From Octopus bimaculoides (lineage: Eukaryota), in NCBI RefSeq assembly GCF_001194135.2, contig NC_068997.1, positions 8,065,873 to 8,129,872 on the forward strand: a stretch of DNA of 64,000 nucleotides. Direction: 5' to 3'. Every line of letters begins with the position of its first letter. Position 1 is the stretch's first letter. The notes beneath the pieces were generated by a model that did no database searches, had not been told where the DNA came from, and saw nothing but the letters and a program-made list of their open reading frames with translations. Shown one piece after another: positions 21,550-60,878 of the stretch. Both the position numbers and the translations under genes were made by a program.

Positions 21550-21648
21550 TTAGAAGTGTGTTTGCTCTGTCATTCCATTTAACAATGCAATAATTGTATC
21601 AATTTTTTTATTTACATTTTCCATCTGAACACGTAGCCCCTCCTCAAT
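21550..21648 (-). CDS. TRPM: TRPM terminal coding exon [32 protein letters not shown]
   Basis: ttattgcag acceptor, phase 0, coiled-coil continuation, TAA at 21550-21552. Confidence 0.85.
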   Translation of the reverse strand: MEEGLRVQMENVNKKIDTIIALLNGMTEQTHF

Positions 21649-60600: not shown

Positions 60601-60878
60601 TGAAATATAATAGTTGTCTCTGTATACTGTACAAAGTACAACCCAGTTGTTCCAGTATGGAAAAAAAATATCTAAGCCTAAACATAAACAAAATATATAA
60701 TTTTACTGTTATACAAAGTCACTGATGAAATGACAAACTACACATTGAAATACAATTTACACAAACAGAAATTATCAATAAAATAAGTATCAAAAATAAT
60801 TACCTTTGCAATTTTCTGCCCATATCCTACAAACTTCACATCACCAAATGCATCAGTACAGAATTCTGATGTAGAACT
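21550..60878 (-). CDS. TRPM: TRPM-family (TRPM2-like) cation channel, whole spliced model of 24 exons, 5'-incomplete, 1013 aa
   Basis: 24 GT-AG exons with consistent phases sum to 3042 nt ending in TAA. Motifs seen: [95 protein letters not shown]-terminal coiled coil. Confidence 0.95.
22420..22474 (-). CDS. TRPM: TRPM exon coiled coil [18 protein letters not shown]
   Basis: Heptad pattern; strong acceptor; phase 2 to 0. Confidence 0.88.
23593..23725 (-). CDS. TRPM: TRPM exon [22 protein letters not shown]...SSSN(K)
   Basis: LxxWE motif; strong sites; phase 1 to 2. Confidence 0.9.
24125..24312 (-). CDS. TRPM: TRPM exon with TRP box FSFQKVQE...[22 protein letters not shown]...HSVF
   Basis: TRP box and PPLPPPF; alternative acceptor at 24306; phase 2 to 1. 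Confidence 0.95.
25007..26574 (+). mobile_element. RTE-clade LINE, 5'-truncated, antisense in a TRPM intron
   Basis: [44 protein letters not shown]; (GAT)n tail. Confidence 0.93.
27026..27131 (-). CDS. TRPM: TRPM exon S6 (E)[34 protein letters not shown](S)
   Basis: LLNLLIAMF; long polypyrimidine acceptor; donor gtaaga; phase 1 to 2. Confidence 0.96.
27190..27590 (-). mobile_element. Two family-B SINE copies
   Basis: Core motif twice; shared ggttgcaagttttggcacaaagcca ends. Confidence 0.8.
28208..28382 (-). CDS. TRPM: TRPM exon S5, pore helix and filter MQDLGYF...[14 protein letters not shown]
   Basis: S5 plus YGE filter; phase 0 to 1. Confidence 0.96.
28532..30066 (-). mobile_element. RTE LINE 5' portion (APE endonuclease and linker), sense to TRPM
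   Basis: [37 protein letters not shown]. Confidence 0.92.
30420..31100 (-). mobile_element. CR1/L2/Jockey-group LINE RT C-terminal remnant
   Basis: [21 protein letters not shown]...LLDQVQK. Confidence 0.7.
31866..32111 (-). CDS. TRPM: TRPM exon S3-S4 and linker ILTRSS...FWNIVD...[11 protein letters not shown]
   Basis: WNxxD and LGPKLVMI motifs; phase 0 to 0. Confidence 0.96.
32220..33060 (-). mobile_element. Degraded LINE remnant, likely endonuclease region
   Basis: GC-richer broken coding-like sequence; weak motif similarity only. Confidence 0.35.
33301..33429 (-). CDS. TRPM: TRPM exon S1-S2 [15 protein letters not shown]...IFTEEIHQ
   Basis: Two TM helices, EExxQ; donor gtaagt; phase 0 to 0. 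Confidence 0.95.
34327..34432 (-). CDS. TRPM: TRPM exon [35 protein letters not shown]
   Basis: FYxxPxVKF motif; phase 2 to 0. Confidence 0.92.
34790..35210 (-). mobile_element. Old RTE endonuclease remnant
   Basis: Similar to 29439-29700 ([16 protein letters not shown] versus [17 protein letters not shown]). Confidence 0.65.
36311..36336 (-). CDS. TRPM: TRPM 26-nt micro-exon DHNERNNK(L)
   Basis: tttacag and gtaagt sites; supplies the phase 0 to 2 shift the model needs. Confidence 0.75.
38270..38475 (-). mobile_element. Family-B SINE
   Basis: Core motif. Confidence 0.85.
38476..38582. repeat. (AAT)n/(AAC)n microsatellite
   Basis: Direct reading. Confidence 0.95.
38623..38682 (-). CDS. TRPM: TRPM exon [20 protein letters not shown] (pre-S1)
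   Basis: Pre-S1 helix pattern; AAG|gtaata; phase 0 to 0. Confidence 0.88.
38925..39090 (+). mobile_element. SINE family C, 5' half
   Basis: ggttcagtcccactgtgtggcaccttggg. Confidence 0.75.
39225..39620 (+). mobile_element. Tc1/mariner transposase N-terminal HTH remnant
   Basis: [12 protein letters not shown]...[15 protein letters not shown]. Confidence 0.75.
39727..39952 (-). CDS. TRPM: TRPM exon [14 protein letters not shown]...[17 protein letters not shown]...ILM
   Basis: MHR4 motifs; phase 2 to 0. Confidence 0.95.
40784..40922 (-). mobile_element. RTE 3'-tail fragment
   Basis: (CAT)n followed by ttaacgtc...catgctggcatggg. Confidence 0.75.
41100..41680 (+). mobile_element. Penelope-like element GIY-YIG endonuclease remnant
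   Basis: Frame from 41399 reads CGICINL...[28 protein letters not shown]. Confidence 0.8.
41790..41990 (+). repeat. Stand-alone units of the RTE tail array
   Basis: gtaaaaagcaccattc...gccagtgccgcctgactgg units. Confidence 0.7.
42385..42551. repeat. (GACA)n(GATA)n microsatellite about 10 nt from a TRPM donor site
   Basis: Direct reading. Confidence 0.95.
42561..42661 (-). CDS. TRPM: TRPM exon [16 protein letters not shown]...FQEHA(D)
   Basis: ALIA-KLLK motif; donor gtgagt; phase 0 to 2. Confidence 0.93.
43560..43602. repeat. 14-bp tandem (CCAGTATACATTTT) x3
   Basis: Direct reading. Confidence 0.85.
43817..43905 (-). CDS. TRPM: TRPM exon [29 protein letters not shown]
   Basis: LFLWAV-NR-MA-FW motif; phase 1 to 0. 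Confidence 0.95.
44384..44730 (-). mobile_element. RTE 3'-tail element
   Basis: Reverse complement of the 26230-26574 type sequence. Confidence 0.88.
45697..45842. repeat. (AAT)n(AAG)n microsatellite
   Basis: Direct reading. Confidence 0.95.
46174..46288 (-). CDS. TRPM: TRPM exon [38 protein letters not shown]
   Basis: Strong splice sites (tttcag, gtaagt); phase 0 to 1 fits both neighbours; variable region. Confidence 0.8.
46397..46560 (+). mobile_element. Probable Tc1/mariner left end
   Basis: TA|CAGGGTTGGTCAAAAGTC TIR-like start; no right end found. Confidence 0.45.
46617..46954 (+). mobile_element. RTE 3'-tail element running into a gap
   Basis: Same family as 44384-44730, opposite orientation. 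Confidence 0.88.
47427..47750 (-). mobile_element. Non-LTR element C-terminal zinc-finger remnant
   Basis: [18 protein letters not shown]. Confidence 0.5.
47850..48420 (+). mobile_element. Old RTE-type RT remnant
   Basis: [13 protein letters not shown] and [14 protein letters not shown]. Confidence 0.75.
48613..48702. repeat. 16-bp minisatellite (AAGTGCATATCTATGA) x5.6
   Basis: Perfect tandem copies. Confidence 0.95.
49123..49257 (-). CDS. TRPM: TRPM exon [28 protein letters not shown]...NLYKM
   Basis: DRVDFVK motif; donor gtaagt; phase 0 to 0. Confidence 0.95.
50071..50168 (-). CDS. TRPM: TRPM exon [32 protein letters not shown]
   Basis: LALxWNRxDIA motif; donor gtaaga; phase 1 to 0. Confidence 0.95.
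50460..50690 (-). mobile_element. R4/Dong-like (RLE-type) non-LTR 3' end
   Basis: [32 protein letters not shown] (50560-50685). Confidence 0.7.
50720..50870 (+). mobile_element. R4/Dong-like non-LTR 3' end, second copy
   Basis: [31 protein letters not shown] (50755-50850). Confidence 0.7.
50890..50985. repeat. (CAT)n/(CGT)n microsatellite
   Basis: Direct reading. Confidence 0.95.
51810..52070 (+). mobile_element. Family-B SINE with partial internal duplication
   Basis: TGGCAGAATCG A box, GTTCAAATTCC B box; core repeated near 52030-52070. Confidence 0.85.
52484..52697 (-). mobile_element. Family-B SINE
   Basis: Near-consensus copy. Confidence 0.88.
52755..52942 (-). CDS. TRPM: TRPM exon SQLKKLKVV...[13 protein letters not shown]
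   Basis: DxDxxILKA motif; phase 2 to 1. Confidence 0.88.
54139..54206 (-). CDS. TRPM: TRPM exon [22 protein letters not shown](R)
   Basis: GSGRAAD motif; phase 0 to 2. Confidence 0.93.
54835..55022 (-). mobile_element. Family-B SINE
   Basis: Core motif. Confidence 0.8.
55346..55458 (-). CDS. TRPM: TRPM exon [37 protein letters not shown]
   Basis: VEGGPGT motif; phase 1 to 0. Confidence 0.93.
56944..57118 (-). CDS. TRPM: TRPM exon GSWPAEY...[14 protein letters not shown]...KKIQ(G)
   Basis: Hallmark [12 protein letters not shown]; tag|GGA and CAAG|gtaagg; phase 0 to 1. Confidence 0.95.
58205..58412 (-). mobile_element. Family-B SINE (a degraded plus-strand copy lies near 57350-57480)
   Basis: Core motif. 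Confidence 0.8.
58575..58729 (-). CDS. TRPM: TRPM exon (G)[19 protein letters not shown]...[19 protein letters not shown]
   Basis: ttttacag|GT and GAT|gtgaat; phase 1 to 0. Confidence 0.9.
59800..59980 (-). CDS. TRPM: TRPM exon FVRVDYET...GLVKAARST(G), MHR1/SLOG
   Basis: cag|TTT and ACAG|gtaagc; phase 0 to 1. Confidence 0.95.
60055..60340 (-). mobile_element. SINE family C
   Basis: Reverse complement of the 20005-20299 type. Confidence 0.82.
60804..60878 (-). CDS. TRPM: TRPM exon [25 protein letters not shown] (acceptor could instead be at 60888)
   Basis: TDAFG motif; donor AAG|GTAATT; phase 0 end. Confidence 0.85.

What the first reader, a model, noticed from the sequence alone, without database searches (positions are those of the whole stretch)
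21550..60878. TRPM2-like channel that keeps the Ca2+ sensor but appears to have lost the ADP-ribose modules
Seen: S2 EEIHQ and S3 WNIVD retain the E-x-x-Q and N-x-x-D pairs; the filter is [10 protein letters not shown]; the ORF stops right after the coiled coil (TEQTHF*), with no NUDT9-H or kinase. Established: those residues form the Ca2+ site of TRPM2/4/5/8, and an acidic YGE-type filter is typical of Ca2+-permeable invertebrate TRPM2. Inference: a Ca2+-gated, Ca2+-permeable channel uncoupled from ADPR, possibly gated by temperature, lipid or an external chemical in a cephalopod sensory role.
Basis: partly seen in the sequence, partly recalled or inferred. Interest (0 to 1): 0.7.

Follow-up and report, generated by a model that had tools for sequence, protein, structure and literature searches.

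The report
Octopus TRPM2-like channel lacking Nudix domain
This is a real, already annotated Octopus bimaculoides ion-channel gene of the TRPM2-like (TRPM-beta) group that, like all its cephalopod relatives, has lost the C-terminal ADP-ribose-hydrolase domain that other molluscs keep. It retains the calcium site and a calcium-permeable type of pore, so it is a modest new example of a domain loss that has happened many times in this family.

Summary
On the minus strand I rebuilt 25 coding exons (62929..21550, all introns GT-AG). They encode 1031 aa identical to residues 67-1097 of RefSeq XP_014781149.1/XP_052830056.1 (O. bimaculoides 'TRPM-like 2 isoform X1'). The first 66 aa lie outside the window. 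All four N gaps are intronic, and the gap-free O. sinensis orthologue has the same exon chain.

A NUDT9-H profile finds no Nudix-coding sequence in the window, the O. sinensis locus or a relative's mRNA.

In my tree the gene sits in a 100%-supported cephalopod clade of 10 proteins, none with NUDT9-H. Its sister clade is 15 chiton, bivalve and gastropod TRPM2-like proteins, all with NUDT9-H. The loss is therefore at least as old as the common ancestor of the cephalopod sequences sampled, and it is not among the six losses in the 2026 TRPM survey.

That module is present, but three positions invariant in every NUDT9-H-bearing relative have changed (G208A, M215V, Y/F295S). dN/dS is 0.34.

Verdict: an ordinary annotated gene and a new member of a known kind. 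Loss of ADPR gating is plausible but unproven.

The parts
62886..62929 (-). Coding exon (first one inside the window; residues 67-81, IGETNSNLPPIPDNA)
   Evidence: Exact match to XP_014781149.1; AG acceptor and GT donor
60804..60888 (-). Coding exon (DCQSSTSEF...QKIAK); the finding's upper limit, 60878, falls inside it
59800..59980 (-). Coding exon, start of the MHR1 / SLOG domain (FVRVDYETP...ARST)
58575..58729 (-). Coding exon, MHR1. Holds the nucleotide-pocket loop [14 protein letters not shown] (58718-58677), equivalent to hsTRPM2 T207-G219. Here the sequence is S-A-G...V where NUDT9-H-bearing relatives have T-G-G...M.
56944..57118 (-). Coding exon, MHR1/2. Holds [14 protein letters not shown] (57022-56981). 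Ser259 replaces the aromatic of hsTRPM2 Y295; Arg266 corresponds to R302 and is kept.
55346..55458 (-). Coding exon, MHR2. Holds [10 protein letters not shown] (55420-55391): G333 kept, T336 kept, T339 changed to S.
54139..54206 (-). Coding exon ([14 protein letters not shown]...). Arg321 corresponds to hsTRPM2 R358 and is kept.
52755..52942 (-). Coding exon, MHR2
50071..50168 (-). Coding exon, MHR2/3
49123..49257 (-). Coding exon, MHR3 (exon 11). The following intron holds gap 46955-47426.
46174..46288 (-). Coding exon, MHR3 (exon 12)
43817..43905 (-). Coding exon, MHR3/4
42561..42661 (-). Coding exon, MHR4
39727..39952 (-). Coding exon, MHR4 (Pfam TRPM2-like domain)
38623..38682 (-). Coding exon, pre-S1
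36311..36336 (-). 26-nt micro-exon (DHNERNNK-)
34327..34432 (-). Coding exon, pre-S1
33301..33429 (-). Coding exon, S1-S2. Ca2+-site E761 and Q764 lie in EEIHQ (33315-33301).
31866..32111 (-). Coding exon, S3-S4. Ca2+-site N786 and D789 lie in WNIVD (32051-32037). The following intron holds gaps 30248-30351, 29331-29340 and 29001-29010, and a LINE-like element.
28208..28382 (-). Coding exon, S5, pore helix and selectivity filter [10 protein letters not shown] (28238-28209)
27026..27131 (-). Coding exon, shortened post-filter loop (ENIKSKL, no Cys pair) and S6 (27114-27028)
24125..24312 (-). Coding exon, TRP helix [12 protein letters not shown] (Ca2+-site E964) and PPLPPPF
23593..23725 (-). Coding exon, post-TRP region (rib helix)
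22420..22474 (-). Coding exon, first half of the C-terminal coiled coil ([18 protein letters not shown]); donor GTTTGT after 22420
21550..21648 (-). Terminal coding exon: second half of the coiled coil, TEQTHF, and stop TAA at 21552-21550
   Evidence: Orthologues end at the same place.
21358..21375 (-). First AATAAA/ATTAAA hexamers downstream of the stop (first bases at 21375 and 21363): candidate polyadenylation signals
   Evidence: Consensus match only; not tested.

Best explanation
Shown: the region is most of the Octopus bimaculoides gene encoding XP_014781149.1/XP_052830056.1, a full-length TRPM-beta (TRPM2-like) channel subunit of 1097 aa. It has MHR1-4 (SLOG), six transmembrane helices, a TRP helix and a C-terminal coiled coil, and it ends there.

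Shown: it is the most derived member of a cephalopod-specific set of paralogues, with at least one tandem neighbour. This family descends from the molluscan TRPM2-like gene that still carries the NUDT9-H ADP-ribose pyrophosphatase domain in chitons, bivalves and gastropods. NUDT9-H was lost on the cephalopod stem, before the octopus duplications.

Inferred mechanism:
- The subunit forms a tetrameric, Ca2+-permeable, non-selective cation channel. It has an nvTRPM2-type acidic YGE filter.
- Opening depends on intracellular Ca2+ bound at the intact S2-S3/TRP site.
- Without NUDT9-H it cannot hydrolyse ADPR, so it is no longer a 'chanzyme'.
- In this paralogue the N-terminal ADPR pocket has also diverged at three otherwise invariant contact positions (G208A, M215V, aromatic-295 to Ser).

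My best guess is that ADPR sensitivity is strongly weakened or lost, and that Ca2+, perhaps with voltage, temperature or an unknown ligand, is the main gate. That would resemble what happened in TRPM4/5/8 after their own NUDT9-H losses.
For: Identity and structure:
- The exon model is identical to the RefSeq protein.
- Pfam finds SLOG, TRPM2-like and Ion_trans domains and nothing else.
- nvTRPM2 (6co7) is the top solved-structure hit both overall and for the transmembrane region.

No NUDT9-H:
- The NUDT9-H HMM is negative on the window.
- It is also negative on the gap-free O. sinensis locus including 10 kb downstream of the stop, on a paralogue locus, and on a relative's mRNA with about 900 nt of 3'UTR.
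- All 10 cephalopod proteins end shortly after the coiled coil, whereas 15 of 15 other molluscan orthologues have NUDT9-H at 310-390 bits.

Phylogeny:
- The cephalopod clade has 100% bootstrap support and Mollusca 84%. The alpha clade is separate at 100%.
- In the larger data set the alpha clade is separate at 97-99%, and the immediate sister group of the octopus clade was at least 80% lophotrochozoan TRPM2-like sequences in 183 of 200 replicates.
- The published ML and Bayesian trees place this accession in TRPM-beta (PMC13143021, Table S1).

Ca2+ site and filter: 5 of 5 site residues are kept, and the filter matches nvTRPM2.

Pocket erosion is stepwise along the tree:
- Stem: T207S and G208A.
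- Derived octopus paralogues: M215V/A and T339S.
- This orthogroup: F295S.
- hsTRPM2 M215A and Y295A abolish ADPR-evoked current (PMC13060097, citing Huang 2019; PMC6759353).
- TRPM5 shows analogous changes at the same positions.

Functional constraint: dN/dS against O. sinensis is 0.34 overall and 0.31-0.38 in every domain. Neutrality is rejected at p=3.5e-10.
Against: - No functional or expression data for this gene were available. No exact-match transcript contig was found; only the genome record was returned.
- R302, G333, T336 and R358 equivalents are intact, and M to V is a conservative change. nvTRPM2 gates on ADPR through this pocket without needing NUDT9-H, so ADPR or a related nucleotide could still be the agonist.
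- The isolated hsTRPM2 MHR1/2 domain with Y295A still binds ADPR in the micromolar range (PMC13060097).
- The deletion of the conserved pore-loop C...CP pair and the S6 TN-to-VH change raise the possibility of altered or absent conduction.
- My trees are neighbour-joining with simple gamma distances. Deep nodes were weakly supported in the large data set.
Confidence: 0.6

Rival explanations
1. The channel is still an ADPR-gated (or related-nucleotide-gated), Ca2+-co-activated channel that uses the N-terminal MHR1/2 pocket, as nvTRPM2 does. On this reading, losing NUDT9-H removed only the built-in ADPRase that terminates signalling.
For: - NUDT9-H is dispensable for gating in nvTRPM2, and MHR1/2 is proposed as the orthosteric site across species (PMC6759353; PMC6914804 abstract).
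- The MHR1/2 SLOG fold is present with a strong Pfam hit.
- R302, G333, T336 and R358 equivalents are kept.
- MHR1/2 is under purifying selection (omega 0.31).
- The basal cephalopod paralogues (P0262, P0263, P0245, P0261) keep an almost intact pocket despite lacking NUDT9-H, so the ancestral cephalopod channel probably stayed nucleotide-gated.
Against: - In this orthogroup three positions that are invariant in all 26 NUDT9-H-bearing proteins are changed: G208A, M215V and aromatic-295 to Ser.
- Alanine substitutions at two of these positions abolish ADPR currents in hsTRPM2 (PMC13060097, PMC6759353).
- The same positions are the ones changed in TRPM5, which is not ADPR-gated.
Confidence: 0.28
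2. The gene is a decaying or non-conducting duplicate. It would be a pseudogene in the making, or a modulatory subunit that only works in heteromers with other cephalopod paralogues.
For: - It is the fastest-evolving paralogue. O. bimaculoides versus O. sinensis identity is 90.0%, against 94.5% for the basal paralogue.
- Omega of 0.34 seems high for an ion channel (my own judgement; not benchmarked here).
- It has uniquely deleted the pore-loop C...CP pair that is conserved across bilaterian TRPM-beta, and its S6 has changed from TN to VH.
- The O. vulgaris model CAI9735207 lacks S6.
- It has a tandem paralogue as a neighbour.
Against: - The ORF is intact through 25 exons in the window, all with canonical splice sites. 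O. sinensis has a full-length orthologue that includes S6.
- Omega is significantly below 1, and equally so in the transmembrane domain.
- The Ca2+ site, filter, S6 gate motif [10 protein letters not shown] and TRP helix are all intact.
- The derived residues are identical in three octopus species, which indicates a fixed state rather than drift.
- nvTRPM2 works without the pore-loop cysteines (sequence).
Confidence: 0.1
3. Annotation or assembly artefact: NUDT9-H exons exist but are hidden in an assembly gap or lie further downstream, so the true protein is a canonical TRPM2.
For: - A 482-N gap lies 1.5 kb downstream of the stop (19523-20004).
- The v2 chromosome assembly did not close any of the gaps.
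- The survey paper states that non-vertebrate TRPM-beta retains NUDT9-H (PMC13143021).
Against: - There is an in-frame TAA directly after the coiled coil, with AATAAA hexamers about 175 nt downstream.
- No NUDT9-H signal appears in the whole window, or in the O. sinensis locus with a gap-free 10 kb downstream flank.
- All 10 cephalopod proteins from 3 octopus genomes and 2 transcript sets stop at the same place. The transcripts carry a stop codon and 3'UTR.
- The next TRPM gene downstream is a head-to-tail paralogue, not a Nudix gene.
Confidence: 0.02

Closest known systems
Nematostella vectensis TRPM2 (nvTRPM2, PDB 6co7): invertebrate ADPR- and Ca2+-gated 'chanzyme'
   Same: - Best-scoring solved structure, at 578 bits.
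- Same domain order up to the coiled coil.
- Identical Ca2+-site residues, and a near-identical filter: MYGELFLDEIQ in nvTRPM2 versus [11 protein letters not shown] here.
- No cysteine pair in the post-filter loop.
   Different: - nvTRPM2 has an active NUDT9-H ADPRase and an intact N-terminal ADPR pocket (T-G-G...M, Y, R, G, T, T, R).
- The octopus protein has no NUDT9-H, and its pocket reads S-A-G...V, S, R, G, T, S, R.
- Overall identity is only about 31%.
Molluscan TRPM-like 2 / TRPM2-like proteins with NUDT9-H (for example Liolophura, Sinanodonta, Haliotis, Pecten, Lottia; about 1600 aa)
   Same: They are orthologous: the sister clade within Mollusca. Identity is 40-47%. They share the Ca2+ site and the YGELFL filter.
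   Different: - They keep NUDT9-H at 310-390 bits and end in ...AAF.
- They keep the invariant ADPR-pocket residues.
- They keep the pore-loop C...RCP pair.
Vertebrate TRPM8, TRPM4/5 and cyclostome TRPM2/8: TRPM-beta channels that independently lost NUDT9-H
   Same: - Same architecture: MHR1-4, transmembrane domain, TRP helix and coiled coil, with no NUDT9-H.
- Same Ca2+ site (PMC13143021).
- TRPM5 shows erosion at the same N-terminal pocket positions (G208S, M215T, no aromatic at 295).
   Different: - These are independent losses in a different lineage.
- TRPM4/5 have an FGQ filter; the octopus has YGE. From my own knowledge, TRPM4/5 are monovalent-selective.
- No evidence for cold, menthol or taste-type roles here.
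Other O. bimaculoides and O. sinensis cephalopod TRPM-beta paralogues (XP_014774531, XP_052830018, P0263 'TRPM2' of 1230 aa, P0262)
   Same: Same NUDT9-H-less architecture and same chromosome. XP_014774531 lies 27 kb downstream, head-to-tail.
   Different: - The window gene alone (with its orthologues) has F295S, a deleted pore-loop Cys pair, and S6 TN changed to VH.
- The basal paralogues keep M215, F295 and T339.

Membership tests
TRPM (melastatin) channels | N-terminal melastatin homology / SLOG domain | tested here: met
   Pfam LSDAT_euk E=7.4e-73, LSDAT_prok E=1.4e-18, TRPM2-like domain E=8e-42
TRPM (melastatin) channels | Six-TM ion-transport domain with pore loop, followed by a TRP helix (WxxQRY) | tested here: met
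   Pfam Ion_trans E=4.8e-16. [12 protein letters not shown] aligns with the nvTRPM2 and TRPM5 TRP helices.
TRPM (melastatin) channels | C-terminal coiled coil for tetramer assembly | tested here: inconclusive
   A crude a/d-position count gives 8 of 15 hydrophobic residues in the best heptad register and 8 of 14 in a second one. That would fit two heptad segments with a stutter, but it is weak. The Pfam TRPM tetramerisation model did not hit. No coiled-coil predictor was run.
TRPM-beta clade (TRPM2/4/5/8 plus invertebrate TRPM2-like) | Phylogenetic placement with beta rather than alpha, beta-like, gamma or TRPS | tested here: met
   - The alpha clade is excluded at 97-100% bootstrap.
- The gene is nested in molluscan TRPM2-like sequences (cephalopods 100%, Mollusca 84%).
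- Published ML and Bayesian trees list XP_014781149 as TRPM-beta.
- Caveat: my trees are NJ and contain no labelled beta-like, gamma or TRPS sequences.
TRPM-beta clade (TRPM2/4/5/8 plus invertebrate TRPM2-like) | Intracellular Ca2+ site: S2 E-x-x-Q, S3 N-x-x-D and a TRP-helix E | tested here: met
   E761, Q764, N786, D789 and E964 are all present. Three of the four alpha TRPMs compared have K and E at the two S2 positions with N and D retained in S3; Capitella alpha has K and E plus G and R in S3.
Canonical TRPM2 (ADPR-gated channel / chanzyme) | C-terminal NUDT9-H (Nudix) domain | tested here: not met
   No Pfam NUDIX or NUDT9 N-terminal domain. HMM and tblastn searches are negative on the window and on the orthologous locus.
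Canonical TRPM2 (ADPR-gated channel / chanzyme) | Intact N-terminal MHR1/2 ADPR pocket (hsTRPM2 T207-G209, M215, Y295, R302, G333, T336, T339, R358) | tested here: not met
   R302, G333, T336 and R358 are kept. T207S, G208A, M215V, Y/F295S and T339S are changed. G208, M215 and the aromatic at 295 are invariant in all 26 NUDT9-H-bearing proteins compared.
Canonical TRPM2 (ADPR-gated channel / chanzyme) | Activation by ADPR together with Ca2+ | not testable with these tools
   Requires electrophysiology.
TRPM4/5-type Ca2+-activated monovalent-selective channels | FGQ-type selectivity filter | tested here: not met
   The filter is YGE followed by LFLEEYEE, as in nvTRPM2. TRPM5 has FGQIP.
TRPM6/7 channel-kinases | C-terminal alpha-kinase domain | tested here: not met
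   No kinase domain in Pfam. The ORF ends 6 residues after the coiled coil.

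The most novel reading that the evidence does not exclude
The cephalopod TRPM-beta paralogues form a natural evolutionary series. First the ADPRase domain was lost. Then, paralogue by paralogue, the N-terminal ADPR pocket was remodelled. On this reading the window gene, which is the most derived (pocket G208A/M215V/F295S, pore-loop disulfide deleted, S6 N to H), would have been neofunctionalised into a channel gated by a different stimulus. That stimulus could be a new intracellular ligand, temperature or an external chemical, in an octopus-specific sensory or signalling role.
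Probability: 0.15. Interest if true: 0.6.

Novelty: new member of a known kind. Interest (0 to 1): 0.33.

Why it matters
TRPM2 is the textbook case of a channel fused to an enzyme domain. How ADPR gating is divided between the N-terminal pocket and NUDT9-H, and what happens when NUDT9-H is lost, is an active question.

The 2026 survey of TRPM evolution counts six independent NUDT9-H losses and states that non-vertebrate TRPM-beta retains the domain. The octopus genes it places in TRPM-beta, this one included, do not retain it. That adds a further loss, shared by all the cephalopod sequences sampled, and corrects that generalisation.

The paralogues within one genome show graded erosion of the ADPR pocket on a constant background of Ca2+ site and pore. 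They are therefore a ready-made set of constructs for asking whether NUDT9-H loss precedes and permits loss of ADPR gating, as presumably happened on the way to TRPM4/5/8.

In itself the finding is incremental. The gene is annotated, the architecture is known from vertebrate relatives, and no function is shown.

Tried and rejected
1. A first NJ tree of 150 proteins with Kimura distances pulled the octopus clade next to two long-branch sequences (a rotifer, P0083, and the unidentified P0239), with supports of 2-17%. I judged this long-branch attraction. I repeated the analysis without P0083, P0239 and P0087 using gamma distances, and then with cephalopod sequences that break the long branch.

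2. tblastn with a single crinoid NUDT9-H gave nothing. I considered that too insensitive and replaced it with an 18-sequence HMM and fragment controls.

3. I hoped the chromosome-level assembly would close the gaps, but it carries the same N runs. I used the O. sinensis orthologue instead.

4. I assumed the first 66 residues were a single exon at the start of locus L005. Translation shows they are split over at least two exons outside the window. I left that unresolved because it lies outside the window.

5. I tried to identify the species behind the transcript proteins P0245 and P0261 (runs SRR27666069-86) by literature search and found no hit. They are only inferred to be cephalopod, from their 100% sister position and the shared S207/A208 state.

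6. An exact-sequence look-up of paralogue P0006 found nothing on record.

7. Pfam on the intronic retroelement ORFs gave only a sub-threshold RVT_1 hit and a PHD finger.

8. TRPM-alpha is rejected by the Ca2+ site, the phylogeny and the published table. TRPS is rejected on the published table, which lists a different O. bimaculoides accession (XP_052825070) as TRPS.

9. I did not run structure prediction, because the fold is not in doubt and it would not settle ligand binding.

Full report
**What is in the sequence**

The window is A+T-rich eukaryotic DNA with seven N runs. Stop-free stretches on the minus strand contain recognisable TRPM pieces.

A first protein search with concatenated pieces returned octopus 'TRPM-like 2' proteins. 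One of them, O. bimaculoides XP_014781150.1, matches the window exons at 100%. Guided by these, I resolved every junction and assembled 25 coding exons from 62929 down to 21550. All 24 introns are GT-AG and the frame is unbroken.

The 1031-aa product equals residues 67-1097 of XP_014781149.1/XP_052830056.1 ('TRPM-like 2 isoform X1', 1097 aa). The codons for residues 1-66 are not in the window. In the chromosome record CM046617.1 the gene starts about 2.7 kb beyond the window's high end. The gene is therefore real, annotated and nearly complete here. The finding's upper limit of 60878 falls inside the second in-window exon.

**The gaps**

All four flagged gaps are intronic. The newer chromosome assembly is base-identical to the window and keeps the same N runs, so it could not settle continuity. 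The O. sinensis orthologue could. Its locus has no N inside the gene, and each O. bimaculoides exon maps to an AG/GT-bounded exon. Exon 11 has a GC donor; lengths are equal except for +9 nt in exon 5 and -6 nt in exon 18. The protein (XP_029646968.1, 1098 aa) runs straight across both junctions. Nothing coding is hidden in the gaps.

The intron between the S3-S4 exon and the S5 exon carries a retrotransposon-like ORF on the same strand (30066-28513). The two older RefSeq isoforms (918 and 914 aa) splice into it and then read the S5 exon out of frame. Those isoforms are prediction artefacts.

EEIHQ (33315-33301), WNIVD (32051-32037), [10 protein letters not shown] (28238-28209) and TEQTHF followed by TAA (21570-21550) are all present.

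The transmembrane region aligns best with Nematostella TRPM2 (6co7), whose filter is MYGELFLDEIQ. In a 42-sequence alignment the five Ca2+-site positions are E, Q, N, D and E in every TRPM-beta protein, including this one. The alpha TRPMs compared have K and E at the two S2 positions. Pfam finds only SLOG, TRPM2-like and Ion_trans domains.

**Is NUDT9-H really absent?**

I built a NUDT9-H profile from 18 domains found in related proteins.

- On the six-frame translation of the whole window its best score is 3 bits (E=9). 40-aa fragments of a Lottia NUDT9-H score 13-66 bits in the same database.
- The profile is also negative on the O. sinensis locus (including 10 kb of gap-free downstream flank), on the tandem paralogue's locus, and on a 4.7-kb transcript contig from a related species that carries a stop codon and about 900 nt of 3'UTR.
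- AATAAA hexamers lie about 175 nt after the TAA.

The only remaining loophole is the 482-N gap at 19523-20004. The O. sinensis data close it.

**Where the gene sits**

A library-wide HMMER search gave, after the octopus paralogues, mostly molluscan and other lophotrochozoan TRPM2-like proteins as the best hits. The exceptions were an amphioxus protein (P0111) and a jellyfish protein (P0115). Many of these hits are about 1600 aa long and carry NUDT9-H.

A second word-based search seeded with the transcript protein P0245 brought in more cephalopod paralogues, many molluscan orthologues and nvTRPM2 itself.

The focused NJ tree (42 sequences, 1023 columns, 500 bootstraps) recovers the animal phylogeny:
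- Ten cephalopod proteins form a clade with 100% support, and none has NUDT9-H.
- Its sister is a clade of chiton, bivalve and gastropod proteins, and all 15 have NUDT9-H.
- Mollusca has 84% support, with Lingula, Owenia and Lineus outside, then deuterostomes and nvTRPM2.
- The alpha TRPMs are separate at 100%.

This agrees with Morini et al. 2026, whose Table S1 lists XP_014781149 as TRPM-beta. That paper counts six NUDT9-H losses, none in molluscs, and says the domain is retained in non-vertebrate TRPM-beta. It is the only searchable paper containing octopus, TRPM2 and NUDT9 together. A 2026 cephalopod TRP survey does not mention the domain.

The loss shared by the sampled cephalopod sequences therefore appears to be undescribed. 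It is, however, one more instance of a recurrent event.

In TRPM2 the ADPR site that drives gating is the cleft of MHR1/2. In nvTRPM2, NUDT9-H can be removed without affecting gating (PMC6759353; PMC6914804 abstract). Absence of NUDT9-H therefore does not by itself uncouple the channel from ADPR.

I mapped the residues with functional support: M215, Y295, R302, R358 (PMC6759353, PMC13060097) and G333, T336, T339 (bioRxiv 10.1101/2024.03.18.584035). I used the HMMER alignment to human TRPM2 and then the multiple alignment.

- All 26 NUDT9-H-bearing beta proteins, from nvTRPM2 to mammals, read T207, G208, G209, M215, aromatic 295, R302, G333, T336 and T339.
- All cephalopod genes but one have S207/A208 (P0103 has T207/E208).
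- The basal cephalopod genes (P0245, P0261, P0262, P0263) are otherwise intact.
- The derived octopus paralogues add M215V/A and T339S.
- The window gene and its O. sinensis and O. vulgaris orthologues add F295S.
- TRPM5, which is not ADPR-gated, is altered at the same places.

The pocket is therefore present but eroding stepwise after the NUDT9-H loss.

**Other derived features**

The window orthogroup alone has deleted the C...(R/K)CP pair in the post-filter loop. That pair is conserved in nearly all bilaterian TRPM-beta sequences in the alignment. The window orthogroup also has VH in place of the near-universal TN in S6.

The gene evolves faster than the basal paralogue: 90.0% versus 94.5% identity between the same two species. 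It is not decaying, however. Nei-Gojobori dN/dS against O. sinensis is 0.34 (dS 0.118) and 0.31-0.38 in each of four domains. Neutrality is rejected at p=3.5e-10.

The paralogue XP_014774531 starts 27 kb downstream of the stop on the same strand, just beyond the window's low end.

**Conclusion**

What is shown:
- This is a correctly annotated TRPM-beta gene.
- It lacks NUDT9-H because of a loss shared by all the cephalopod sequences sampled.
- It has an intact Ca2+ site and an nvTRPM2-like acidic filter.
- It is under purifying selection.

What is inferred:
- Ca2+-dependent gating and Ca2+ permeability.
- Weakened or lost ADPR sensitivity in this particular paralogue.

What is unknown: the actual agonist, the expression pattern, and any sensory role.

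Noticed in passing
window 28513-30066 (minus strand), in the intron between exons 32111-31866 and 28382-28208: A retrotransposon-like ORF pair lies on the same strand as the gene and is interrupted by two 10-N gaps. Older RefSeq isoforms XP_014781150.1 and XP_014781151.1 splice into 30039-29935 and then read the S5 exon out of frame, giving truncated 918- and 914-aa products. These look like prediction artefacts. Pfam gave no hit at E<=0.01 for the two ORFs.
   Followed up: partly
window 10594-11628 (minus strand) and 24944-25827 (plus strand): Two related retroelement fragments share a PHD-finger-like Cys-rich ORF (PF00628, E=5e-6) next to a sub-threshold reverse-transcriptase match (RVT_1, 26.6 bits against a cutoff of 29.6). 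The plus-strand copy sits in the intron between the S6 and TRP exons. The v2 annotation places a 169-aa gene model without Pfam hits at about window 13829 downward. It may be retroelement-derived.
   Followed up: partly
window 27026-27131 (S6 exon) and 28208-28238: The window gene and its orthologues have a short post-filter loop (EENIKSKL) that lacks the C...(R/K)CP cysteine pair. That pair is conserved in the other cephalopod paralogues and in nearly all bilaterian TRPM-beta sequences compared. S6 reads [11 protein letters not shown], where almost all others have L(L/M)TN(I/V)LLLNLL.
   Followed up: partly
window about 48949-48966 (minus strand), in the intron after exon 49257-49123: A possible alternative 18-nt micro-exon (YSKVDK) is bounded by TTTCAG and GTGTTT. 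It would be usable with an alternative donor after 49112. It corresponds to the 13-aa insertion [13 protein letters not shown] in the O. vulgaris model CAI9735207.
   Followed up: no
beyond the low end of the window (CM046617.1 8,025,548-8,060,072; locus L007): The paralogue XP_014774531 (about 67% identical) lies head-to-tail 27 kb downstream of this gene's stop. Several further TRPM-like 2 models lie on the same chromosome-scale record (the O. bimaculoides ones on CM046617.1, the O. vulgaris ones on the 79.96-Mb record), including apparently fused or truncated ones (P0108 of 2355 aa, P0240 of 352 aa, P0265 of 1419 aa). This suggests a larger gene cluster with uneven annotation.
   Followed up: partly
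O. vulgaris protein P0001 (CAI9735207) compared with window 27114-27028: The O. vulgaris orthologue model lacks the 27 residues of S6 (…NLII|FQKVQ…), while the O. sinensis orthologue has them. This is either an alternative donor inside the S6 exon or an annotation error.
   Followed up: no
locus L006, about 46843 (O. sinensis orthologue, exon 11 donor): At the position homologous to the window's GT donor after 49123, O. sinensis has a GC dinucleotide. The RefSeq protein nevertheless uses this junction, so it is probably a GC-AG intron.
   Followed up: no
window 8400-8770, 26890-27020, 38224-38600, 42354-42606, 45621-46100, 50856-51023: Long microsatellites and homopolymer-rich tracts, seen in translation as (TG/CA)n, (TA)n, poly-Ile/Leu/Tyr and poly-Asp runs. 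They are mostly intronic or intergenic. None overlaps a coding exon.
   Followed up: no
literature: PMC13143021, section 'NUDT9H domain' and Table S1: The paper assigns XP_014781149, XP_014774531 and XP_052830018 to TRPM-beta and states that non-vertebrate TRPM-beta retains NUDT9-H. The first two show no NUDT9-H in my HMM scan. For the third gene, the precomputed Pfam list of its isoform X2 (P0006) shows none.
   Followed up: yes
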